Positions 40,468 through 58,212 of a DNA stretch of 64,000 bases are shown here, piece after piece. The number at the start of each line of letters is the position of its first letter. Positions within the stretch are counted from its first letter, which is position 1. Below the pieces are notes generated by a model. It was not told where the DNA came from. It searched no databases and saw nothing but the letters and a program-made list of their open reading frames with translations. Made by a program: the position numbers and the translations under genes. The stretch spans positions 124,001 to 188,000 of the IMG/VR virus record IMGVR_UViG_3300020147_000065; one strand, given 5' to 3'.

Positions 40468-40521
40468 GAGACTCGCCCCCCCCCCTTGCAGTTATTGAGC
40501 ATCTGATATAAAATATGTTAT

Positions 40522-40710
40522 ATGAAAAGTTTTTATGTTAAGCAGACAACAAGAAACTCCCGTCACGGAAGTTCAAGTTGGGGAACAGGTCACGTCTGCT
40601 CAACTTATAGTGAACCAGTAGACTCCCTGTTTTTTGCAATTGTCCTTTATTTCGTCTATTTAATTACATTCGATACCGCGATCTGGAATTTGAGCATTAG
40701 ATATGAATGA
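40522..40710 (+). CDS. Small hypothetical protein (leaderless)
   Basis: C-run promoter directly before ATG. Confidence 0.55.
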   Translation: MKSFYVKQTTRNSRHGSSSWGTGHVCSTYSEPVDSLFFAIVLYFVYLITFDTAIWNLSIRYE

Positions 40711-40801
40711 CGCCCCCCCCCCTTGGCAGTATTTAATTTCCGCAGTATAATCTAATTGTCGCTGAGAAATACGGCGAACAAAAAACAAGGTGAGGTTTAC
40801 A

Positions 40802-40912
40802 ATGGGTGATTTTCTTCTCGAAATGTTGGGCGAAGTGGACGAAGCGACGGTAGCGGCACAAGAGACACAATTAGCTGAAGTTGCGGAAACCAAAGACGCC
40901 GACGACGACTAA
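40802..40912 (+). CDS. 36-aa acidic peptide (paralog of 41289-41420; not in ORF track)
   Basis: MGDFLLEMLGEVDEATVAAQETQLAEVAETKDADDD; GAGG SD. Confidence 0.7.
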   Translation: MGDFLLEMLGEVDEATVAAQETQLAEVAETKDADDD

Positions 40913-41046
40913 TTATAGTCACAAAGGGTAAAAACGATTCGCAATTATCGCGCGGGGGAATCCGAAAATTCTCCCGCTCCTTTGTGCCCCCCCCTTGCGT
41001 CAAGTGGTATATTTGTTAAAATAAATGGTGAAAGTGAGGAAAACAA

Positions 41047-41187
41047 ATGGCTGCTTTGACTGATGAACAGAAGAAATTGGGTTGGGTCGAAGGCACTTCC
41101 GCAGAGTTTCTCGGACTCACACCCGAAGAAGAAGCTCAGGTGCTCGAAGAAATGGAAGGTAAACCAGAAGCAGAGGACTCGGAGTAA
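41047..41187 (+). CDS. 46-aa peptide resembling the N-terminus of XRE/HTH antitoxins (not in ORF track)
   Basis: MAALTDEQKKLGWVEGTSAEFLGLTPEEEAQV...; GAGG SD. Confidence 0.65.
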   Translation: MAALTDEQKKLGWVEGTSAEFLGLTPEEEAQVLEEMEGKPEAEDSE

Positions 41188-41288
41188 TCCGGGGACTCTG
41201 CCCCCCCCCTTGCGCAATATCTCAAAGAAGTTAAAATATATTATGTCAGTCAGCAATGACGACAAATCAAATCTTTGGAGAAGAAACC

Positions 41289-41420
41289 ATGTCCATGCTC
41301 GATTTTTTGGCCGATATGCTCGGCGGGGAAGCCACGATGAACGATGTCCAGGCCCAGGAAGCCGCTGTCCTTGCGGCTGCGCGAGAAAAAGACGCCGAAG
41401 ATTACGACGACGAGGATTAG
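41289..41420 (+). CDS. 43-aa acidic peptide (paralog of 40802-40912; not in ORF track)
   Basis: MSMLDFLADMLGGEATMNDVQAQEAAVLAAAREKDAEDYDDED; GGAG SD. Confidence 0.7.
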   Translation: MSMLDFLADMLGGEATMNDVQAQEAAVLAAAREKDAEDYDDED

Positions 41421-41790
41421 TTTATCACTAATCAGGGAAAGGGAAAGTCCGAAAGACTTTCCCTTTTCTTTTTTGTCTGCCCCCCCCCCTACCATCCCAC
41501 TGATAAAATCTCCCCGTGGGTGGCGATCATATGGAAGATGGAAGGCCAGTGAACCATGTCAAAAATAAAATCGAGAATCACTTTCACCTCCCCCTTGCAG
41601 CCATTGTCACACCTTGTTAAAATTTAAGGTATGAAATGGCCCAAGATAATTATCACCACGCGGAAGTATATCTACGGTATCCAATCACAAACCCATTGTC
41701 AATGGTTGGTGATGTGCATAAACAGCATCTAAGGGAGTAGATGCTGCCCCCCCCCTTGCAGCACTTTCATAAATTGCGTATAATTTAATT

Positions 41791-42058
41791 GTGAGCGGCG
41801 GAGTGAGTAAGCAATAGGGCAGTGAGGTTGAGAGAGTAACGTATACGGCGCGGTGATGAGTGCGGAGCCAATCGGACATCGAGATGAGCAACTCCAAACA
41901 ATACTCTAAGGCTATGGAACGAGGAAATCAAGATACATATACCTGCTGAGGCCCAAAGCTCCAACGTGAGCGTTTTCATAACAAGCAAAGATGCTGCGTA
42001 AGAAATTCCGCCCCGTGCGGTGAGATTCAAAGGCCACGAATCCTATATGCGTGGTATC
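41791..42058 (+). ncRNA. Candidate non-coding RNA cassette 1
   Basis: Perfect TTGCAG-17-TATAAT promoter with no ORF filling the cassette; 5' GGCGGAGT can pair with ATTCCGCC near the 3' end. Confidence 0.5.
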
Positions 42059-42107
42059 TTTGCCCCCCCCCCTTGCTCTATAATCCTTATCTGTTAAAAT
42101 AGATTAT

Positions 42108-42341
42108 ATGAATTGCACAATCTGTGGAAAACCTGTCGTATTGGTGCCATCGGCTGAACATAGAGCCGCTAAAGATTGCACAGGTAAAACCGCTGCTTAT
42201 TATCGTAGTTTGTTCACTACCCACGCGGATTGTGAACTCAAAAAGCGGCGCGAGGAATCATTGCCGCGTCCTCTCACAGATTTAGAACGTGTGCAGTATG
42301 CCGGTCGTGGTATCAATTTACCAAATAAAATAATCATATGA
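42108..42341 (+). CDS. Small zinc-binding protein (leaderless)
   Basis: MNCTICGKPV...HADC. Confidence 0.7.
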   Translation: MNCTICGKPVVLVPSAEHRAAKDCTGKTAAYYRSLFTTHADCELKKRREESLPRPLTDLERVQYAGRGINLPNKIII

Positions 42342-42700
42342 CAAGAGTTTGGCGAGTAGAGAACTATCAAGGCTCCAGCCCGTTTGTGGAGCCTTATTTC
42401 GCTAATAAGCCACCCACGGGGTTACAGGTTGACCGACGTGATGATTTTGCTCATGTTAAAGAGTCCCTACCGTGGCGACGTGTTCGCTTCGGTATGACGA
42501 CGCGTGAAAATCTCATCGAATGGTTTGGTTTCTCATTAGTGAAAGAGTTCTACAAAGAGGGTTATCGAATAGTTACCTATATTGTAGACGATAGATACGT
42601 GATGCACTCTAAGAGTCGTTATCAGTTAATGTTTGATTTAGACCACGCGAGATTAGATTATGAGGTAGAAGAAAATCAACTAATGTCAGTATGGCCTTAA
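42338..42700 (+). CDS. Hypothetical protein, possibly ADP-ribosyltransferase-like fold
   Basis: VWRVE...FGMTT...WF...Q pattern loosely resembles ART strand motifs; ATGA overlap with the upstream gene. Confidence 0.4.
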   Translation: MTRVWRVENYQGSSPFVEPYFANKPPTGLQVDRRDDFAHVKESLPWRRVRFGMTTRENLIEWFGFSLVKEFYKEGYRIVTYIVDDRYVMHSKSRYQLMFDLDHARLDYEVEENQLMSVWP

Positions 42701-42748
42701 TGCCCCCCCCCCTTGACGTTCATCCCCGTGGATTGTAAAATAATTAAC

Positions 42749-43087
42749 ATGATTCAACCAGTAGCGGACGCATTACCCGGATTTATTAAAGCGGTCAACG
42801 AAAAAATGACTGACTATTGGGCGCGGCATTATCCTAACTTAACTGCACGTCAAGTCAAAGTCGGTGGTGGTGAGAAGTATATCAAAATCGTTGAAGTCGA
42901 GCATGGCGAAGTGCGTAGCATCTACTGTTTTATTGATGCTTCCAATGGTGATGTGCTTATGCCAGCAAGTTTCAAAAAACCCGCAAAACACGCGCGGGGT
43001 AACATCCTGACCGGCGACCCTGTAAATGACGGGTGTTGTGGGCCTCATGGTGTGCGATACATGGGAACTACCTTCTCTTGGGAGTAG
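42749..43087 (+). CDS. Conserved phage protein (KYIKIV...IYCFID...GDVLMPASFKKPAKHARGNI)
   Basis: Motif recognised from many phage genomes; leaderless behind TTGACG-CCCCGTGG-TAAAAT. Confidence 0.75.
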   Translation: MIQPVADALPGFIKAVNEKMTDYWARHYPNLTARQVKVGGGEKYIKIVEVEHGEVRSIYCFIDASNGDVLMPASFKKPAKHARGNILTGDPVNDGCCGPHGVRYMGTTFSWE

Positions 43088-43139
43088 GTAGTTGCCCCCC
43101 CCCCTTGTCAACAGAAATTATATGGATTAAAATATAAGC

Positions 43140-43823
43140 ATGGACAAAAAGATTGATGACGTTTTAAAGTTCGACCCGATTGACACCGCAGAAAAAATGA
43201 TGGGCGGCGATAGAAGTGATGCTTCTATGTTTCTGGGCCTCGCTCTGGCAATGGAGAACAACGAACAAAAAGAGCGCGTTTTAAATGCGTCAGGCGATAC
43301 GCATTTCAGCACCACGCTTGACCAATATATTTCTATTGTTCAGGGCATCGGTTTCGAGCAGGTTTTGTGCATCCCATTTGTCGGTGAAAAGTGGGGAAAA
43401 GAAACTGCCCCACAAGAGAAATTTTTCGTTTTCTTCGATAAGTCGCGCAGCATTTTGCTTACTTTCGACACCTATAACAGCGGCAAAGTCAACGGTGGCA
43501 AGTTTCTCTATAACATCAAGCCGAACAACGAAAAAAGTTTCTATAATGTTATTTCTTCCGGTGGCTACACGAAAGACAGTGACGGCAATTATGTTTGGGT
43601 TGGTGACCATGACTGCCGCGAAGCCATCAAACACAAGATTGCACGTTTAGAAGAAAACGGGCAATTCTTAACCAAATGGTTAGAGCGCCCTTTTCTCTGG
43701 TTGCTTCATTATATGGACACCAAAGACAAGAATTATGATTATCGCGCTATCAACGCGGAACGAATTGCAATGCTGCCGGATTACGTGCAAGAAGCAATCA
43801 CACCGGCTCAGTCTTCGGACTGA
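43140..43823 (+). CDS. Cassette gene, hypothetical (227 aa, leaderless)
   Basis: TTGTCA-17-TAAAAT-6-ATG; ends in a UUCG hairpin. Confidence 0.8.
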   Translation: MDKKIDDVLKFDPIDTAEKMMGGDRSDASMFLGLALAMENNEQKERVLNASGDTHFSTTLDQYISIVQGIGFEQVLCIPFVGEKWGKETAPQEKFFVFFDKSRSILLTFDTYNSGKVNGGKFLYNIKPNNEKSFYNVISSGGYTKDSDGNYVWVGDHDCREAIKHKIARLEENGQFLTKWLERPFLWLLHYMDTKDKNYDYRAINAERIAMLPDYVQEAITPAQSSD

Positions 43824-43873
43824 GCCTTGCCCCCCCCCTTGCTCTATGAAGTATTTATGGTAGAATATATTAC

Positions 43874-44263
43874 ATGACGACAGCCAAAGTTAATCTAATC
43901 GGACTCATAACCTTTTCCGTTCGTATATCGTGGCAAGGCGACACACCAATAGAAACTTCACGTTTTCTTGATGAAGTAGAGAGTGCTATTCGGCGCTTCA
44001 TCATCACAAAAAGGTTATATTTAACCGATGATTTAGCCTTGCGTGTCTCAAGCCGTCCGTTTGAAGGATGCACGGCTCTGCGTCGGATACATGATGTGGC
44101 TGATATTTATGATGCTTTTGGTTATGTAGCTTATGAAGTAAATATGGACAATATAAGCAAACCTATTCCACTATGCAAACCATCATTGCGTAAAATATTT
44201 GGTCGCTTACCAAATAACATCTATTTCGATATTTATAAGCGTTCGGCTGTCACCTCAGAGTGA
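43874..44263 (+). CDS. Paralog family B protein, copy 1
   Basis: C-terminal CxxxLxxxFGxLPxNIY motif. Confidence 0.7.
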   Translation: MTTAKVNLIGLITFSVRISWQGDTPIETSRFLDEVESAIRRFIITKRLYLTDDLALRVSSRPFEGCTALRRIHDVADIYDAFGYVAYEVNMDNISKPIPLCKPSLRKIFGRLPNNIYFDIYKRSAVTSE

Positions 44264-44314
44264 CAGCCTTGCCCCCCCCCTTGTGAACCTGCCCCGTGGT
44301 TGGTAAAATATAAA

Positions 44315-44558
44315 GCGTTCGGTAGATAGCTTAGGAAAAAGGGAGTGACGACCCGAATAAACTTTGCGCTACTCACAATCTGACGGACTGTAAGAATAAC
44401 TGCATACGTCGTGCAGGGTGTTCAAATGTCAGAGGGCCAGCAACGTGGCACAGTCCAACACAAAACAAGAGAGCCGGTGAGGAACCGGTGAGGTCGAAAT
44501 TGAAATAAGTCGGGCCTCTAAAACCTGACAAAGATTCGGTGTAATGAGCCGAACGCCT
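44315..44558 (+). ncRNA. Candidate structured non-coding RNA cassette 2 with possible pseudoknot
   Basis: Closing stem GCGTTCGG/CCGAACGC; crossed pairings TCTGAC/GTCAGA and GGACTGT/ACAGTCC; several hairpins; no sense ORF. Confidence 0.65.
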
Positions 44559-44640
44559 CTTACAAAAGTATCTGACTACAAAATCTCTTGAGTTGTGCCC
44601 CCCCCTTGTCTGATTCATAAATCTACGATAGAATTAAAGT

Positions 44641-44868
44641 ATGATTAAAACAGAAGAAATGGGCGAGTTTGAAATAGGTCAAACCCATCGTGGGTTTTAT
44701 CTGTATGGAATACGGCAATCCACGGGGAAGAGTTTGTATTGGCAGGGTCGCAAACGTGGTTGGTGTAATGGAGCAATTCCTGACGGCTACTTTAAAAGTA
44801 AAGATCATATCTTTAACAGCGTCGGTGCAGTCCTTCAGCTTGTTGCTGACAAAACCTATCGAGTATAG
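44641..44868 (+). CDS. Cassette gene, hypothetical (leaderless)
   Basis: TAGAAT-6-ATG. Confidence 0.65.
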   Translation: MIKTEEMGEFEIGQTHRGFYLYGIRQSTGKSLYWQGRKRGWCNGAIPDGYFKSKDHIFNSVGAVLQLVADKTYRV

Positions 44869-44920
44869 GTTTTGCCCCCCCCCCTTGCACCCTTTAAAAC
44901 TTAGAGTTAGAATATATTAC

Positions 44921-45136
44921 ATGGAAACACAAGCGCCTGATTCGATTATCGTTTACCGTTCGCCAAGTGACAAGCTGATTGCCGAAACTCAATATGATAT
45001 TATGATGGCAGTCGGCAACTTTTTCTGGGACAACTGGCTCGTGATTTTGGGTGGCCTCGGATTCGGAATCTTCCTTTTCGCTGTGCTGATTCCGTGGTTT
45101 CAAGACAGCGTAATTAAAGGTCGGGTTCGCCGCTAA
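44921..45136 (+). CDS. Single-TM membrane protein (leaderless)
   Basis: METQAPDSIIVYRS... with hydrophobic C-half. Confidence 0.65.
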   Translation: METQAPDSIIVYRSPSDKLIAETQYDIMMAVGNFFWDNWLVILGGLGFGIFLFAVLIPWFQDSVIKGRVRR

Positions 45137-45207
45137 GCGGTGGGCCTTGCCCCCCCCCCTTGTGCAGCATAGTAAATTTGTTAAAATAAATAGTGAGGTT
45201 AATCATT

Positions 45208-45432
45208 ATGAAAATTGCTTCTGCTGCTCCGACAAACACTGGTGTAAATGTTCAGTTGTCCTCTCAGGTCGCCTACATTGGCCGCAATGCCAACATCGGG
45301 CGTCAGGCTAACATTGGCTGCAATGCCAACATCGGGCGTCAGGCTAACATTGGCCGCCCATTCAATGCTACCATGCAACAGGCCGCCGCGCATCGTCGCC
45401 GGATGATGCCCGTGCTGCGGCGCACGAAGTAA
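45208..45432 (+). CDS. Small protein with hexapeptide repeats (ANIGRQ/ANIGCN)
   Basis: 18-nt unit repeated about five times, forming a duplicated 36-nt block at 45275-45356. Confidence 0.65.
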   Translation: MKIASAAPTNTGVNVQLSSQVAYIGRNANIGRQANIGCNANIGRQANIGRPFNATMQQAAAHRRRMMPVLRRTK

Positions 45433-45507
45433 GGAACGGGGAGCATAAAAGCTCCCCGTTCTGCCCCCCCCCTTGTCATAAATAACATATTTGATAAAAT
45501 ATATTAC

Positions 45508-45927
45508 ATGACAATCACAAGATTTCATCGCCCACCAAACGACAAGCCACTGCTCGCAATGTTAATTGTGGTATGCTTGATTCTCGGCATTGCCATCGCC
45601 CAAGCCTCAGAGCCACAAGTAACTCAACCTCAATTCAAACAAGAGTTTCGGTTCATGCCGTGGCAAGATCAGGGCGAACGAAATGTTCAGACGCAAATAC
45701 CTCTCGCTAAATTCTTATGGGGAGAAGGCCCGACAGATCAAAACCTCGAAGATTTTGAAGATATGTGCCGACGCTTTGAGGAACCGGGCGGGTTTCAAAG
45801 TGAAGCTGAAATGGAAGCTGCCCGACGTGTTCTCGGTGTGCCGGAAGAACTTATGGATTTATACGTTGATGAAGGGTATGGAAAAGGGCACATTCCGATC
45901 AAATTACCAGCGACTCTCGATGTTTGA
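45508..45927 (+). CDS. Secreted or membrane-anchored protein
   Basis: N-terminal hydrophobic helix ending AIAQA. Confidence 0.65.
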   Translation: MTITRFHRPPNDKPLLAMLIVVCLILGIAIAQASEPQVTQPQFKQEFRFMPWQDQGERNVQTQIPLAKFLWGEGPTDQNLEDFEDMCRRFEEPGGFQSEAEMEAARRVLGVPEELMDLYVDEGYGKGHIPIKLPATLDV

Positions 45928-45978
45928 GAGTTTGCCCCCCCCTTGTTCAATAGTTTATTACGAGTTAAAATATATTAC

Positions 45979-46281
45979 ATGAAGAACGGTCATGTATATC
46001 CCGACGGTCATATTCTCATTGATGGACGGCAACACCAACTAATGCCACGCGCGGCATCTGTAGCAACCCGACTTGTGCGTGGTTTGGATAATCACACACT
46101 TGAAATTACCACCGAAGAACCATCCTCATTTGATGTGTCACTACATAAGGTTGGTGGCCAAAATTGGATTAACTATCGTAGCCCGGTTTACGGTGATATG
46201 ATGTTCTGTGACACAGGATTAATCAAGGTGTTCGGCACAATCCCTGAGAATATCTATGTGGCGGTAGTTCCTCAGCAATGA
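45979..46281 (+). CDS. Paralog family B protein, copy 2
   Basis: FCDTGLIKVFGTIPENIYV. Confidence 0.7.
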   Translation: MKNGHVYPDGHILIDGRQHQLMPRAASVATRLVRGLDNHTLEITTEEPSSFDVSLHKVGGQNWINYRSPVYGDMMFCDTGLIKVFGTIPENIYVAVVPQQ

Positions 46282-46332
46282 GGAATTGCCCCCCCCCTTG
46301 CAGCATCTATTATCTAATGTTATCCTTTAATC

Positions 46333-46887
46333 ATGGAAAAGAACGACATCCTCGATATTTACCACAAAGGCGCTGCTGTTGGTATTGCTACTCCGTTTTC
46401 TGAACTGCCATTAGGCCGATATTTTTATGATGGTGGACAGGAATATAAAAAGGTCAGCGATGACACCGCATTCGGTAATCATTCGCGTCGTTTCAATCCT
46501 TCTTATTTGGTTGTAATTACGTTGGTTACACCGCTATTTAACTTTCATGATGTGGATAAAGTTTATCTGGCGATGTGTGACCATTTCGGCGTGTTTTTCC
46601 ACAGACAGAACACCCGCGCAGACGTTGCCCGTGCCTTAATGAATTTGCCCGTGTTGGTGGTTACTGAGGTTGTAGCATGGGCAAAGATGAAATGGGCGCA
46701 AAAGATGTTCGAGGTCGAAACTCAGCGCGGCATCGGCAACCCCGAAAAGTTGGCCGAATTACAGCAGACGTGGAGTGCGCTTTATAATGCGATTGCAGCA
46801 AAGCATTATCCGGCGGGGCGTTTCTACTGGGTGGAGTGTCGCGGCGATATTCGCCGCATTGACCCTTCGCGTTACCGTTCGCGGTAA
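46333..46887 (+). CDS. Cassette gene, hypothetical (leaderless)
   Basis: TTGCAG-17-TATCCT-ATG. Confidence 0.75.
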   Translation: MEKNDILDIYHKGAAVGIATPFSELPLGRYFYDGGQEYKKVSDDTAFGNHSRRFNPSYLVVITLVTPLFNFHDVDKVYLAMCDHFGVFFHRQNTRADVARALMNLPVLVVTEVVAWAKMKWAQKMFEVETQRGIGNPEKLAELQQTWSALYNAIAAKHYPAGRFYWVECRGDIRRIDPSRYRSR

Positions 46888-46938
46888 CGCTTGCCCCCCC
46901 CCTTGTCAAAATCTATAAATGAGCGTATAATAATTATC

Positions 46939-47262
46939 ATGTTATTCTCGAAGCCAATCATTCTAACCGGACACTATAATGTGGGAGCAAAGTTCATTCG
47001 TTTAAACGGTAGAGCTTATGATTTGTTTGCTACTGCTGATTATGCAATTACAAATTTACTCCCCGCATATAAAGATGAAGCGGAAATTGCTCTTGTTCTA
47101 TCGAATAGACATATACAGGGCGGTTTAACCTTCAAACGAACCGTTGATGAGAACGGTGATATTTATTATGTCGGTTATGGTTATGAGGGGAGAGTTTGTA
47201 GACCCGCATTAAAAGAGTTATTCGGCTATCTTCCACGCCGGTTATACCTAAAGTTCATTTAG
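46939..47262 (+). CDS. Paralog family B protein, copy 3
   Basis: VCRPALKELFGYLPRRLYLKF. Confidence 0.7.
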   Translation: MLFSKPIILTGHYNVGAKFIRLNGRAYDLFATADYAITNLLPAYKDEAEIALVLSNRHIQGGLTFKRTVDENGDIYYVGYGYEGRVCRPALKELFGYLPRRLYLKFI

Positions 47263-47309
47263 GTATTGCCCCCCCCTTGTTCCCCCGTGGTTTGCTTGAT
47301 ATAATTTAA

Positions 47310-47502
47310 TTGTCAGTGAGAGAGCGCATATAGTTTGATAAAGCGTAACGTGGCTCATGGTAGGACATAGGCCCCCTGCCAGTAAGGGTTCTTCGGAATC
47401 GTATAATGAGTTCCCCCGCCTAAATGGTGTCTATTCATTTCACTGGATAGGCCCAACATGAAAGCGCAGTGGTGAGTGAAAGCATCCTTCTCTCACTGAC
47501 AA
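47310..47502 (+). ncRNA. Candidate structured non-coding RNA cassette 3
   Basis: Perfect 14-bp terminal stem TTGTCAGTGAGAGA/TCTCTCACTGACAA starting near +1 of a TTGTTC-17-TATAAT promoter; internal UUCG hairpin; no ORF. Confidence 0.7.
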
Positions 47503-47598
47503 GGTTTGGGCGTATGACCCAGTAATGAGGCGCACAGAGGCGTCTGCCCGTTGCCCCCCCCCCTTGCATTAACTAAAGAAAAGTAGGATAATAATAGT

Positions 47599-47919
47599 AT
47601 GGATAAAGTTAATGATGAACAACAACCCGCTGTTTCTATGGATTTGCAACTCGTTGCCTTCTCAAAAGACAATCAGGACGGCTCTGGCAGCGTTCACGTT
47701 TTCAACGACACCGACGAACTTCGCAAACATTTTGATGAAGTTTACGACGCCGACATTGACGAAGAGTGCGCGAAAGAAGCAGAAGAAAAGTTCAACGTTG
47801 CCATCGCAGGTTCTCAACCCTACGAAGTTGGCACGGTTGAAACGAAAACCATCAAAGTGGTAGTCGAAAACGGCAAAGTGCGACTCGCTGAGTCCCTACA
47901 CTTTAGCACCGGACAATAG
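47599..47919 (+). CDS. Acidic hypothetical protein (leaderless)
   Basis: TTGCAT-17-TATAAT then ATG. Confidence 0.7.
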   Translation: MDKVNDEQQPAVSMDLQLVAFSKDNQDGSGSVHVFNDTDELRKHFDEVYDADIDEECAKEAEEKFNVAIAGSQPYEVGTVETKTIKVVVENGKVRLAESLHFSTGQ

Positions 47920-54645: not shown

Positions 54646-54742
54646 TGTTCCTCCTTACCGGGAAACGGAGGCTTCCGGGCCTCCGTTTCTTCGGTCTGCC
54701 CCCCCCTTGTCACAAGTAAATTAAAACGATATAATCTATTAC

Positions 54743-55159
54743 ATGAGTGAAACAAACAACGTGAACATTGCTGAACTGAGCCTGAACCAAATTGCATTCT
54801 TAAAGCTCGGCCTCAAAGAAGGCGACACCGTAAAGGTTGTTGCTAAAGTGCCAGAAGGCACACACGGTTCTGATATTTACTGGGAAACGAGTATGACCCG
54901 TAAAATCGGTAAAACCCAACGAGTAGTAGGTGCGCGGAACCATAGCCGAATCGAACTCGAAGATGGGTATTACTACCCTGCCCTCGCGCTGGAAAAAGTG
55001 AAAGTTGTCAAGGAAATTCGGCTCCCTGACTACACCGCTTTAGTCAGCGAAGATGGTGTATCCGTGGGTTGCCAAAACCTCACCAAAGAAATGGTGTTGG
55101 GTATCGTAAAAGCCGCAGTGGAAACGAACTTCATTTCACAGGAGGACTTGGAGTTCTAA
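54743..55159 (+). CDS. Paralog family C protein, copy 2
   Basis: Family C motifs. Confidence 0.85.
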   Translation: MSETNNVNIAELSLNQIAFLKLGLKEGDTVKVVAKVPEGTHGSDIYWETSMTRKIGKTQRVVGARNHSRIELEDGYYYPALALEKVKVVKEIRLPDYTALVSEDGVSVGCQNLTKEMVLGIVKAAVETNFISQEDLEF

Positions 55160-55233
55160 GCCGGGAGCCGTCGAAAGACGGCGACCTGCCCCCCCCCTTG
55201 TCACTACTCAAGAATAACAGTAAAATATATTCC

Positions 55234-55653
55234 ATGAGTGATAAAGTAAAGACAATGAATGATGTGGCTTTCGAGTTTCTCAATGAGAAATTCAAAGTTG
55301 GCGACAAAGTGCGAGTCACCATGCGGGTTGACTCTGGTGTGCAGGGTAATCGAATTGACTGGCTTGAGGGAATGGAAGAGGCTCTCAATTCGGGACTTCA
55401 CACTATTCTGGATACCAACGAGTCGTATGGTGCGTTCCGACTGAGTTGTGGTTACTGGTTCCCGGCGTTGGCAATCAGCTCTGATGTTGGTAAAGTCACT
55501 GTCAAACTGCCCGACTACACAGCCGAAATCACCAAAGAAAAAGTCAACGTAGGTTGTCAAGTTCTGACAAAAGAGATGATTCTCAGTATCGTAAAGGCCG
55601 CAGTGGACACCGGCTTTTTAAATGAGGAGGATATTGCCTCACTTAAAGGTTAA
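55234..55653 (+). CDS. Paralog family C protein, copy 3
   Basis: Family C motifs; leaderless MSDKVK. Confidence 0.85.
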   Translation: MSDKVKTMNDVAFEFLNEKFKVGDKVRVTMRVDSGVQGNRIDWLEGMEEALNSGLHTILDTNESYGAFRLSCGYWFPALAISSDVGKVTVKLPDYTAEITKEKVNVGCQVLTKEMILSIVKAAVDTGFLNEEDIASLKG

Positions 55654-55732
55654 GCGGCGGGGAGCTGCCTTCAGGCAGCGACCTCTTGCCCCCCCCTTGC
55701 ACTAACCAACTAAAAACGATAGAATATATTCC

Positions 55733-56158
55733 ATGAGTGATACAACAGCAAAGACGGTTAATGATGCAGCGTTTGAGATTCTCAGCGCAACGGTCAAAGA
55801 AGGCAGCAAGGTTCGCGTAATTCTTCGTATCCCAAAAGGTATGCATGGAAGCCGCATCTCATGGGTTGACTCGATGGACGGAAACGTGGGCGTCGGTATC
55901 CACACTGTAACCGATGTAAGCCCTCGCTACGGTGCTTTCGAGTTGGACAACGAAAAGTGGTATCCTGCGGTTGCTCTTTCGGCGGACGCGGAAACCGTTC
56001 GCGTCGCGCTCCCTGACTACGAAGCAGAAATTACCAAAGATGGTATCGTAGTCGCGGGGCAGAACCTCACCAAAGAGATGGTTCTCGGCATCGTGCAGGG
56101 TGCGCTCGACACCGGATTCCTTGATAAAGGAGATGTAGCCACTATTAAGACTTCCTAA
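55733..56158 (+). CDS. Paralog family C protein, copy 4
   Basis: Family C motifs. Confidence 0.85.
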   Translation: MSDTTAKTVNDAAFEILSATVKEGSKVRVILRIPKGMHGSRISWVDSMDGNVGVGIHTVTDVSPRYGAFELDNEKWYPAVALSADAETVRVALPDYEAEITKDGIVVAGQNLTKEMVLGIVQGALDTGFLDKGDVATIKTS

Positions 56159-56238
56159 GCAACGGGGAGCCATCCACGGGTGGCGACCTTTTGCCCCCCC
56201 CCTTGCACCAAAATAAGATAAGCGGTATAATTTATTAC

Positions 56239-56676
56239 ATGAGCGATACACAAACAACCCCCGAACTGACCGTGAACCAAGCCGCATTTAATGTTTTAAA
56301 TGCGAAAGTGACCGAAGGCGACAAGATTCGCGTCGTCCTCAAAGTGCCTATTACCGTGCATGGTAGTGATGTGAACTGGGTCGAAGAGATGGACAACACC
56401 ATCAACAAAACGCTTCGCGTTCGCCGCGTTGACGCAAGCAATGGTTCTTTCTATCTCAGCAACGGCTACTGGTATCCTGCCGTGGCACTCTCCACCGAAG
56501 TAGCAAAAATCACCGTGCCGCTGCCGGATTACACGGCGGAAATCACCAAAGAACAGGTCAACGTCGGCTGCCAGATTTTGACCAAAGAAATGATTCTCGG
56601 CATCGTGCAAGGCGCGTTGGATGTAGGGTTTCTGAGCGAAGAGGATGTGAACCGCCTCGACACCAGAGAAGTATAA
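56239..56676 (+). CDS. Paralog family C protein, copy 5
   Basis: Family C motifs; leaderless MSDTQT. Confidence 0.85.
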   Translation: MSDTQTTPELTVNQAAFNVLNAKVTEGDKIRVVLKVPITVHGSDVNWVEEMDNTINKTLRVRRVDASNGSFYLSNGYWYPAVALSTEVAKITVPLPDYTAEITKEQVNVGCQILTKEMILGIVQGALDVGFLSEEDVNRLDTREV

Positions 56677-56750
56677 CCGGGTGGACTCTTCGGAGTCCAC
56701 CCTGCCCCCCCCCCTTGCGCTGATAGAATTTAAACAGTATAATTTATTCC

Positions 56751-57167
56751 ATGAGTGAAACAAGAAAGACGGTTAATGACGCGGCGTTTGAAATCCTCAA
56801 CGCACAGTTGAACATTGGTGATAGAGTTCGTATTGTCGCCAAAATTGATGAGGGTGTCCACGGCAGCAAGACTGTTTGGACATCTCGCATGAATGATAGT
56901 GTGGGTCAGTTTATGACTATTCGCGGTGTTGAACCTGAGTATGGTGCTTTTCAGTTGGATAACTATTACTGGTATCCTGCCGTGGCACTCGATACTCAGG
57001 TGCATAAAGTGACGGTTAATCTGCCGGATTATTGCGCTGAAATCACCAAAGAAGGGGTGAACGTGGGTTGTCAGAACCTCACCAAAGAAATGATTCTGCA
57101 AATCGTGCAGGGCGCGTTAGACGTGGGTTTTCTCGATGCCGAGGACATCGAAAGTCTGAAAGTATAA
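56751..57167 (+). CDS. Paralog family C protein, copy 6
   Basis: Family C motifs. Confidence 0.85.
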   Translation: MSETRKTVNDAAFEILNAQLNIGDRVRIVAKIDEGVHGSKTVWTSRMNDSVGQFMTIRGVEPEYGAFQLDNYYWYPAVALDTQVHKVTVNLPDYCAEITKEGVNVGCQNLTKEMILQIVQGALDVGFLDAEDIESLKV

Positions 57168-57244
57168 GCGGCGGGGAGCTATCGAAAGATAGCGACCTTG
57201 CCCCCCCCTTGGCAACACTCAATATAAACAGTAAAATATAAGAC

Positions 57245-57643
57245 ATGAACATGAACCAAGCAGCATTCGAGACGTTGAAGGAAACGCGCGGCATCGGTGA
57301 CAAAGTGAAGGTTGTCCTGCAAGTGGACAAAGGTGTGCATGGAAACCTCTTCCGTTGGGATTCCGGTATGACCGAACAAATCGGAAAAGTCTTGACAATC
57401 AAAGAGTTCGATTCTTCGGACAACACCATCCTGCTGTCAGATAGCCGTTATTATCCCGCACTCGCTTTGATGAGCGACAACGGCCCCATTATCGTGGAAT
57501 TGCCCGATTACAAGGCAGAAATCCACGCTGACCGTGTGCAAGTTGGTTGTCAGTGCCTCACCAAACAGATGGTGTTGGACATCGTGAAGGGTGCAGTATC
57601 TGTCGGGTTTATGAGCGAATCAGATTTGGAGGGTCTGCGATAA
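57245..57643 (+). CDS. Paralog family C protein, copy 7
   Basis: Family C motifs. Confidence 0.85.
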   Translation: MNMNQAAFETLKETRGIGDKVKVVLQVDKGVHGNLFRWDSGMTEQIGKVLTIKEFDSSDNTILLSDSRYYPALALMSDNGPIIVELPDYKAEIHADRVQVGCQCLTKQMVLDIVKGAVSVGFMSESDLEGLR

Positions 57644-57720
57644 GCCCCCGCGGACTCTTCGGAGTCCGCCTTGCCCCCCCCCCTTGCACAAGGTTCAAAT
57701 TAAGGGGTATAATTTATTCC

Positions 57721-58137
57721 ATGAGCAAACAAAAGACGTTACACGACATTGCATTTGAAGAACTGGGCATCGAAGAGGGCGACTTCGCTAAAGTCGTCCT
57801 TAAAGTGGACGAAGACGTTCACGGTAACCCGCTCCGTTGGTCGCATGGTATGGAAGAAATGTTAGGTAAGACATTTCGCGTCACCAACATTGATACCAGC
57901 GACAACACAATCGAACTGAACAACGGCGAATGGTTCTCGGCTATTTCGCTCGAAAAGGCAACCGGCGAAATCAAGGTGCAATTACCGGATTACACCGCAG
58001 TCGTAACCAAAGAAGGCATGGAAGTTGGTTGCCAGAAACTCGACAAAGACAAGGTTTTGGAAATCGTTCAGGCTGCAATCACCACCGGTATGATTGACCG
58101 CGATGATGTCGAAGACCTCGACTATCACGACGACTAA
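57721..58137 (+). CDS. Paralog family C protein, copy 8
   Basis: Family C motifs; leaderless MSKQKT. Confidence 0.85.
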   Translation: MSKQKTLHDIAFEELGIEEGDFAKVVLKVDEDVHGNPLRWSHGMEEMLGKTFRVTNIDTSDNTIELNNGEWFSAISLEKATGEIKVQLPDYTAVVTKEGMEVGCQKLDKDKVLEIVQAAITTGMIDRDDVEDLDYHDD

Positions 58138-58212
58138 GCGGGGTGCTGCCTTCGGGCAGCACTCTTGCCCCCCCCCCTTGCCTTGTCCCCGTGGTTGGGT
58201 TATCCTTTACAT

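What the first reader, a model, noticed from the sequence alone, without database searches (positions are those of the whole stretch)
44281..44596. RNA candidate 2: ~240-nt multi-stem RNA with a crossed (pseudoknot) pairing
Seen: terminal stem GCGTTCGG/CCGAACGC beginning at about +1; order TCTGAC, GGACTGT, GTCAGA, ACAGTCC gives an a-b-a'-b' pseudoknot; further stems TGCA/TGCA, GCCA/TGGC, CCGGT/ACCGG and GAGG/CCTC. I cannot assign it to a known class. Inference: a new structured RNA such as a ribozyme or protein decoy.
Basis: partly seen in the sequence, partly recalled or inferred. Interest (0 to 1): 0.7.

Follow-up and report, generated by a model that had tools for sequence, protein, structure and literature searches.

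The report
ORF-free promoter unit in soil jumbo phage
This is a roughly 280-base stretch with its own strong promoter but no gene, in an uncultivated soil giant phage; it probably makes a non-coding RNA, but the proposed pseudoknot fold is no better than chance and no relatives exist to test it.

Summary
The window is part of a 221-kb soil-metagenome jumbo phage. It carries 74 near-identical "hairpin, poly-C, -35 TTG, -10 TAnAAT" cassettes, and in most of them the ATG follows the -10 by about 7 nt (leaderless mRNA). The finding fills exactly one slot between two cassettes (promoter 44281-44309, predicted +1 about 44316, next poly-C at 44598).

The slot is non-coding: each + frame has 5-7 stops, codon-usage scores are negative in all six frames, and tblastn finds no paralogue remnant.

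The fold is not supported:
- The MFE z-score (-1.8 to -2.4) equals the median of neighbouring coding slots.
- The count of perfect stems is near chance.
- The terminal stem disappears from the MFE once the 3' tail is included.
- The pseudoknot has a zero-nucleotide first loop.

Rfam, ARAGORN, nhmmer, a covariance model and a reverse-transcriptase search all found nothing. No homologue could be fetched, so covariation is untestable. No RNA-seq run was listed.

Verdict: a real, promoter-driven, ORF-free unit. It is most likely an orphan phage ncRNA, with a decayed gene slot as the main rival. Ribozyme and decoy roles are speculation. Two or three similar ORF-free slots lie nearby, and the one at 47277 has a much stronger terminal helix.

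The parts
44237..44246 (+). Upstream copy of the direct repeat AAGCGTTCGG, inside the 3' end of the 129-aa gene. Bases 44239-48 pair 10/10 with AGCCGAACGC at 44547-56.
   Evidence: the only 10-nt flanking repeat among 74 cassettes; permutation null 2 of 1458
44245..44268 (+). Cassette hairpin GGCTGTCAC/GTGACAGCC that ends the upstream gene slot
   Evidence: (I4)
44272..44280 (+). Poly-C tract (9 C) of the promoter cassette
44281..44309 (+). Sigma-70-type promoter: -35 TTGTGA, 17-nt spacer holding the CCCCGTGG box (44292-99) and a TG, then -10 TAAAAT 44304-09
44316..44597 (+). Predicted ORF-free transcript body. The +1 is inferred at 44316 plus or minus 1, by analogy with the leaderless cassettes. 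The 3' end is unknown.
44315..44322 (+).
   Evidence: (I6, D5)
44379..44456 (+). Central domain. Stem b, GGACUGU/ACAGUCC (44385-91 / 44450-56), encloses hairpins 44400-16 and 44436-49 and is present in every MFE and centroid. The crossing stem a, UCUGAC/GUCAGA (44379-84 / 44428-33), would make the pseudoknot.
   Evidence: (I8)
44459..44472 (+). A-rich 5' arm of a long-range helix (12 of 14 paired) with 44584-97
   Evidence: I1; p 0.06
44474..44518 (+). Two hairpins: CCGGU-GAGGA-ACCGG (44474-88) and GAGGUC...GGCCUC (44490-95 / 44513-18)
44549..44556 (+). In the whole-slot fold it instead pairs locally with AUUCGG at 44534-39.
44584..44597 (+). 3' arm of the long-range helix. It abuts the next poly-C, where 64 of 74 cassettes have a local hairpin; this slot has none.
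44598..44640 (+). Next cassette (poly-C, -35 TTGTCT, -10 TAGAAT), followed by the leaderless ATG of a 75-aa gene at 44641
44411..44491 (+). Longest + strand ORF in the slot (26 aa from GTG; 21 aa from the ATG at 44426). It has a weak SD-like AGGG and negative codon score, and is judged spurious.
44373..44618 (-). 81-aa antisense ORF. It runs through the variable poly-C tract, has no promoter and no coding signal, and is judged spurious.

Best explanation
The stretch is one unit of the phage's cassette-driven early-gene array that carries no gene.

Inferred from sequence grammar: the host sigma-70 RNA polymerase starts at about 44316, from a consensus promoter that also holds the phage-wide CCCCGTGG box. 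It transcribes roughly 240-280 nt of purine-rich, non-coding RNA.

The product is most likely a stand-alone phage non-coding RNA made early in infection. Its 5' end may be tucked into a short helix (44315-22 with 44549-56). Its centre forms the one robust element, the 7-bp stem 44385-91/44450-56 with two small hairpins. Its 3' part is closed either by a long-range helix that abuts the next poly-C or runs on into the next gene.

Shown: promoter grammar, absence of coding capacity, absence of any known RNA family.

Inferred: that it is transcribed as a discrete RNA, that the RNA is stable, and that it acts in trans, for example by binding a host or phage protein. The specific pseudoknot and any catalytic activity are not supported.
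For: - Cassette grammar: 74 copies, with the ATG 35-36 nt after the TTG in most. This slot has an intact -35, TG and -10.
- No + ORF above 26 aa. Codon-usage log-odds are negative in all six frames, against +0.10 to +0.40 for 12 neighbouring genes.
- No paralogue remnant by tblastn of the three frames.
- Two more slots in the same 7 kb (41756-42062, 47277-47553) are equally non-coding. Slot 47277 has a 13-14-bp helix starting at its predicted +1 (0 of 500 shuffles). So structured ORF-free transcripts are plausible in this array.
- The 5'-anchored helix of this slot has p 0.012.
- Jumbo phage PA5oct has four transcribed ORF-free orphan loci of 236-619 nt annotated as ncRNAs (PMC7318152).
Against: - No transcript evidence: no RNA run was listed.
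- No homologue, so no conservation or covariation data.
- Folding energy is not distinguishable from mRNAs of the same array.
- The MFE is poorly defined: ensemble frequency is 0.0005-0.0024, and the fold changes with the 3' boundary.
- There is no terminator-like hairpin at the 3' end, so a discrete RNA is not assured.
- The three other ORF-poor slots share a TAATTGT start context that this one lacks, and none resembles it in sequence. The covariance model of its core (which searched the whole window) did not match them either.
Confidence: 0.42

Rival explanations
1. Non-functional filler: a dead or never-functional slot. Promoter-terminator cassettes of this kind promote modular shuffling, as PeSLs do in T4-like phages. 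A cassette could therefore come to drive a decayed gene or captured junk sequence. The stems would then be chance inverted repeats.
For: - Stem counts and folding energy are at the level of shuffles and coding neighbours.
- A neighbouring ORF-poor slot (40723-40986) still shows a coding-like frame (+0.19) with 3 stops, so gene decay may occur in this array.
- The flanking genes are ORFans with high turnover.
- PeSL cassettes mediate indels and swaps in hyperplastic regions (PMC4122927).
- The 10-nt direct repeat around the cassette could be a recombination scar.
Against: - No residual coding signal in any frame and no paralogue remnant.
- The promoter is fully intact.
- Slots in this array are otherwise 85-97% coding, so 280 nt of junk is unusual.
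- The 5'-anchored helix has p 0.012.
Confidence: 0.33
2. Cis-acting leader: with no hairpin before the next poly-C, transcription from 44316 continues into the 75-aa gene (44641-44868). The 280 nt would then be a long regulatory 5' UTR giving a second, non-leaderless mRNA form of that gene.
For: - This slot is one of only 6 of 74 cassette junctions without a stable local hairpin.
- No intrinsic terminator on the + strand within the slot.
Against: - The downstream gene has its own consensus promoter and leaderless ATG, and no Shine-Dalgarno sequence for translation from a longer transcript.
- No riboswitch or leader family matched.
- A long-range helix abutting the poly-C could stand in for the missing hairpin.
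Confidence: 0.1
3. A self-cleaving ribozyme or other catalytic pseudoknotted RNA. The a-b-a'-b' order with one hairpin in each loop copies the P1/P2/P3/P4 topology of HDV-like ribozymes.
For: - The topology is present in the sequence.
- Both strands of stem a are unpaired in the nested MFE, so the pseudoknot is compatible with it.
Against: - There is no nucleotide between the P4-like hairpin and the 3' strand of stem b, which is where HDV-like ribozymes carry the catalytic C.
- 11 nt separate the P3-like hairpin from the 3' strand of stem a, against 0-1 in that family.
- The first loop has zero nucleotides, and the first P1 base is U rather than G (plus established knowledge of the family).
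- No Rfam ribozyme family matched even at E<=10.
- The crossing arrangement has p 0.09.
Confidence: 0.03
4. A very small protein: the 21-26-aa ORF at 44411/44426-44491 (basic and hydrophilic) is the product, and the rest of the slot is UTR.
For: The ORF exists, with a weak AGGG 7 nt upstream of the ATG.
Against: - Negative codon score in that frame.
- Leadered genes of this phage have strong GGAGG/GAGG sites.
- About 110 nt of leader and 105 nt of trailer would be unexplained.
Confidence: 0.06

Closest known systems
Orphan ncRNAs of jumbo phages defined as transcribed ORF-free loci (e.g. ncRNA001-004 of Pseudomonas phage PA5oct, PMC7318152)
   Same: A 200-600-nt ORF-free stretch in a jumbo phage, with no similarity to any database sequence and unknown function.
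   Different: The PA5oct loci were defined by RNA-seq and lacked recognised promoters. Here the promoter is clear, but there is no transcript evidence.
PeSL (promoter-early stem-loop) composite terminator/promoter cassettes of T4-like phages (PMC2839356, PMC4122927)
   Same: This concerns the context, not the RNA. A small stem-loop plus early promoter is repeated before many small variable genes. That gives a modular array in which units can be swapped or lost.
   Different: - The sequence is unrelated.
- This phage's cassette has a poly-C tract between hairpin and -35, and no U-run.
- It drives leaderless mRNAs.
- Recombination activity is not shown here.
HDV-like self-cleaving ribozymes
   Same: Nested double-crossing order: P1 5', P2 5', hairpin, P1 3', hairpin, P2 3'.
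   Different: There is no J4/2 nucleotide for a catalytic C, the junction before P1 3' is long, J1/2 has zero nucleotides, and Rfam gives no match.
Stable bacterial ncRNAs closed by pairing of their 5' and 3' ends (6S RNA, Y RNA/YrlA, RNase P RNA, tmRNA)
   Same: A possible terminal helix formed by the 5' end and a 3'-proximal segment.
   Different: No covariance-model or ARAGORN match to any of them. The helix is only 8 bp and is not kept in the whole-slot fold.

Membership tests
Any Rfam 15 family (4227 models, including RNase P, tmRNA, 6S, Y RNA, riboswitches, ribozymes, GOLLD/ROOL/HEARO) | Covariance-model score at or above the family's gathering threshold | tested here: not met
   No hits over the whole window at gathering thresholds. 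Only two sub-threshold junk hits outside the RNA body at E<=10. No hits at E<=1 over 40500-47700.
tRNA / tmRNA | Cloverleaf or tRNA-like domain with a tag reading frame | tested here: not met
   ARAGORN found no genes in the window.
HDV-like ribozyme | P1/P2 nested double pseudoknot topology | tested here: inconclusive
   The order a-b-a'-b' with two inner hairpins is present. Statistical support is weak (p 0.09).
HDV-like ribozyme | Catalytic cytosine in J4/2, and a P3 strand adjoining the 3' strand of P1 | tested here: not met
   J4/2 has 0 nt (44449 is followed directly by 44450). 11 nt (44417-27) separate the P3-like hairpin from the 3' strand of stem a.
Retron msr/msd ncRNA | Adjacent or co-resident reverse transcriptase gene | tested here: not met
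   PF00078 was searched in six frames over the whole 221-kb record and gave no match.
Paralogous RNA family within the phage | Sequence or structure similarity to other loci of the genome | tested here: not met
   blastn found only itself plus 10-12-nt chance words. Pairwise local alignments of the four ORF-poor slots are at shuffle level. Covariance model R1 of the core hits only itself in the genome.
Conserved RNA in related jumbo phages | Homologous sequence or structure near the conserved 227-aa neighbour gene | tested here: not met
   nhmmer and blastn over about 650 kb of related loci plus six genome-contig loci gave nothing. The covariance-model search of 37 related loci (689 kb including the window) gave a best E-value of 2.4. 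The nearest relative (P0002, 63% identity) could not be fetched.
Phage orphan ncRNA (operational class) | Discrete transcript from an ORF-free locus | not testable with these tools
   No RNA run was listed for this sequence. ORF-free status and the promoter are shown.
PeSL-like promoter/terminator cassette (context of the finding) | Repeated composite stem-loop plus early promoter before many small genes | tested here: met
   74 copies, of which 64 have a stable hairpin ending 0-5 nt before the poly-C. This is resemblance of kind only; the sequence is unrelated to T4-like PeSLs.

The most novel reading that the evidence does not exclude
An orphan soil jumbo phage encodes a small set of early, cassette-driven, structured non-coding RNAs: this one, slot 47277-47553 and slot 41756-42062. 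They would belong to no described class. This one would fold into a pseudoknotted core (stems a and b) clamped by a 5'/3' helix and act on a host or phage protein.
Probability: 0.15. Interest if true: 0.6.

Novelty: new member of a known kind. Interest (0 to 1): 0.3.

Why it matters
If real, it would add to the few non-coding RNAs known from jumbo phages. It comes with an unusually clean transcription grammar: a predictable +1 and an early promoter class. That would make it easy to synthesise and probe. As it stands it is one unverified orphan candidate. The surrounding regulatory architecture is the more solid and more unusual observation: 74 poly-C cassettes driving leaderless genes, and 138 copies of a CCCGTGG box.

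Tried and rejected
1. Rfam at gathering and permissive thresholds, and ARAGORN: nothing.
2. Homologue hunt:
- blastn against GenBank phages found nothing.
- Both flanking proteins in IMG/VR gave nothing useful.
- The poly-C motif in IMG/VR, in two forms, gave only single chance hits.
- The metagenome scan found only the source contig.
- The 129-aa neighbour has no relative among 5.8 billion proteins.
- The major capsid protein has no close relative in IMG/VR.
- The 227-aa gene family gave 34 IMG/VR, 4 ENA, 1 JGI and 6 genome-contig loci. None has the cassette or any match to the RNA.
- The one apparent close relative (P0002 contig, JGI sample 3300045391) is listed without DNA.
3. Sequencing runs: two soil DNA runs hold the identical sequence. 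No variation and no RNA run.
4. Paralogy among the four ORF-poor slots: the MAFFT alignment looked suggestive, but local-alignment scores are at shuffle level.
5. Pseudogene test by tblastn of the three frames (X at stops) against the genome: nothing.
6. Antisense-target search in the genome: only chance 10-12-mers.
7. Retron: no reverse transcriptase.
8. CsrA/Rsm-type sponge: only 3 GGA motifs in 283 nt, about the chance number (read).
9. Target-site-duplication idea for the cassette: the 10-nt flanking repeat is unique to this cassette and not general.
10. The antisense 81-aa ORF and the small + ORFs were rejected on codon score and context.

Full report
**Context.** The window is bases 124001-188000 of a 221,108-bp virus record from a soil metagenome (CheckV 89%). 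Its major capsid protein and terminase are only remotely like those of known phages. No close relative exists in GenBank phages or IMG/VR.

From window position 35.7 kb onward, the + strand carries a dense array of small genes. Each is preceded by the same cassette: a stem-loop, then (Y)TG, 7-10 C, then TTG as -35, a 16-18-nt spacer, TAnAAT, and about 7 nt later the ATG. There are 57 copies in the window and 74 in the genome, against 0.1 expected. In most cassettes the ATG lies 35-36 nt after the TTG, so most of these mRNAs must be leaderless. In 64 of 74 cassettes a stable hairpin ends 0-5 nt before the poly-C. In kind, though not in sequence, this resembles the PeSL terminator/promoter cassettes of T4-like phages (PMC4122927).

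**The observation.**
- The -35 TTGTGA is at 44281 and the -10 TAAAAT, with an upstream TG, is at 44304-09.
- The predicted +1 is about 44316, and the next poly-C starts at 44598.
- All listed stems are present.

The slot has no + strand ORF longer than 26 aa. It has 5-7 stops per + frame and negative codon-usage log-odds in all six frames. Twelve neighbouring genes score +0.10 to +0.40 in their reading frame. The three-frame translations find no paralogue remnant in the genome. The antisense 81-aa ORF runs through the poly-C tract, has no promoter and no coding signal. So the locus is a promoter-bearing, non-coding unit. That part of the finding is sound.

**Is it a structured RNA?** The evidence is weak.
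- MFE z-scores are -1.78 (44315-44560), -1.94 (44316-44597) and -2.41 (my own shuffles).
- Eighteen other slots of 180-340 nt, nearly all coding, range from +1.3 to -6.9 with a median near -2.4.
- Perfect stems of 6 bp or more number 8 against 5.8 expected (p 0.2).
- Stems of 7 bp or more number 4 against 1.4 (p 0.03-0.04). This is the lowest of 19 slots, but that is what the minimum of 19 tests would give.
- A crossing pair with adjacent 5' arms occurs in 9% of shuffles.
- The terminal stem anchored at +1 has a duplex energy reached by 1.2% of shuffles. However, 3 of 67 slots have a perfect 5'-end stem of 8 bp or more.

When the slot is folded up to the poly-C, the terminal stem vanishes from both MFE and centroid. 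CCGAAC then pairs locally with AUUCGG (44534-39). A long-range helix, 44459-72 with 44584-97 (12 of 14 paired), closes the 3' domain right against the poly-C. That is the position where other cassettes have their hairpin (p 0.06).

Only the 7-bp stem 44385-91/44450-56, with its two inner hairpins, and the CCGGU hairpin are stable across folds. The proposed pseudoknot has zero nucleotides between the 5' strands of stems a and b, which is sterically awkward for an H-type knot. It copies the strand order of HDV-like ribozymes but lacks a J4/2 nucleotide, where the catalytic C sits, and it has an 11-nt junction where that family has 0-1.

**Known classes.** None matched.
- Rfam gave nothing at gathering thresholds over the window and nothing relevant at E<=10.
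- ARAGORN gave nothing.
- The genome has no reverse transcriptase.
- There is no paralogue by blastn.
- A covariance model of the core (R1) hits only itself in the genome. It found nothing in 689 kb searched (the window plus 37 related jumbo-phage loci), with a best E-value of 2.4.
- nhmmer and blastn also found nothing there.

**Homologues.**
- The 129-aa upstream gene is an ORFan among 5.8 billion proteins.
- The 75-aa downstream gene has no relative in IMG/VR.
- The 227-aa gene two slots upstream belongs to a widespread jumbo-phage family (phrog_36907; 108 hits). All fetched relatives at 61% identity or less have ordinary terminators and promoters and nothing like this RNA.
- The nearest hit (63%, a 4.2-kb JGI contig) shows about 52-nt gene spacing and one 269-nt gap, which suggests the same architecture.
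- Two soil DNA runs carry the identical sequence, and no RNA run was listed.

Covariation and transcript tests were therefore impossible.

**Neighbouring evidence.** Three other single slots are ORF-poor.
- 41756-42062 and 47277-47553 are non-coding in every frame.
- 40723-40986 keeps one coding-like frame with three stops, so it may be a broken gene.
- Slot 47277 has a perfect 13-14-bp helix that starts at its predicted +1 and closes a roughly 180-nt core (0 of 500 shuffles). This is much better evidence for a structured RNA than anything in the slot under review.
- These three slots share TAATTGT at the start site, which the present slot lacks. None resembles it in sequence.
- Both slots 44281 and 47277 carry the CCCCGTGG box in their promoter spacer.

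**Interpretation.**
- Most likely (about 0.4): the slot yields a stand-alone early non-coding RNA of unknown role. This is comparable to the transcribed ORF-free orphan loci of jumbo phage PA5oct (PMC7318152). In its favour are the intact consensus promoter, the complete lack of residual coding signal in an otherwise 85-97% coding array, the modest 5' helix, and the precedent of slot 47277.
- Main rival (about 0.33): a dead or junk slot left by cassette-mediated shuffling. This fits the chance-level structure statistics and the 10-nt direct repeat AAGCGTTCGG that flanks only this cassette.
- Leader for the next gene: about 0.1.
- Micro-protein: about 0.06.
- Ribozyme: about 0.03.

**Verdict.** The locus is real and non-coding. 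The fold, the pseudoknot and the proposed functions are unsupported. Interest is low to moderate.

Noticed in passing
window 35730-63404 (and genome-wide, 74 copies): A repeated regulatory cassette: stem-loop, (Y)TG, 7-10 C, TTG (-35), 16-18 nt, TAnAAT, then about 7 nt to the ATG. Most early genes therefore appear to be leaderless and individually promoted. The hairpin is followed by a C-run, not a U-run. No other record in IMG/VR shows multiple copies.
   Followed up: partly
whole genome; e.g. window 44292, 36747, 42724, 47283, 53147, 58187, 60576, 70365, 78030(-), 81072, 85869: The motif (C)CCCGTGG-NNRG(C) occurs 138 times on both strands (CCCCGTGG 34+35 against 1.5 expected per strand). About 20 copies sit in promoter spacers just upstream of the -10; most are inside genes. 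Its role is unknown: it could be an operator, a second promoter class, or a nick or modification site.
   Followed up: partly
window 47277-47553: An ORF-free slot whose predicted 5' end forms a perfect 13-14-bp helix (UUGUCAGUGAGAGA with its complement about 180 nt downstream; 0 of 500 shuffles). It also has a terminal hairpin before the poly-C. This is a stronger ncRNA candidate than the one assigned. Rfam gives no match.
   Followed up: partly
window 41756-42062 and 40723-40986: Two more ORF-poor slots. The first is non-coding in all frames. The second keeps one coding-like frame with 3 stops and may be a broken gene. Both, together with slot 47277, share TAATTGT at the predicted start site.
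   Followed up: partly
window 44237-44246 and 44313-44322: An exact 10-nt direct repeat, AAGCGTTCGG, flanks the promoter cassette of the finding. It is the only such case among 74 cassettes. The upstream copy pairs 10/10 with 44547-56, better than the copy at +1 does.
   Followed up: yes
window 54707-58167: Eight tandem paralogous genes of about 132-145 aa, each with its own cassette.
   Followed up: no
window 44875 (poly-C before the 71-aa gene): The poly-C tract is 2 C shorter in the second soil run (X2). Tract length is polymorphic or error-prone.
   Followed up: no
genome 1-186 and 220923-221108 (outside the window): The first 70 nt of the record recur 186 nt from its end, and the match resumes after a poly-C tract of 11 against 10 C. 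The 'linear' record therefore overlaps itself and is probably a complete or terminally redundant genome of about 220.9 kb.
   Followed up: partly
JGI metagenome 3300045391, 4193-bp contig encoding P0002 (no DNA served): The nearest relative of the 227-aa gene (63% identity). It shows about 52-nt spacing between small genes and one 269-nt gene-free gap. This suggests the same cassette architecture and perhaps an ORF-free slot.
   Followed up: no
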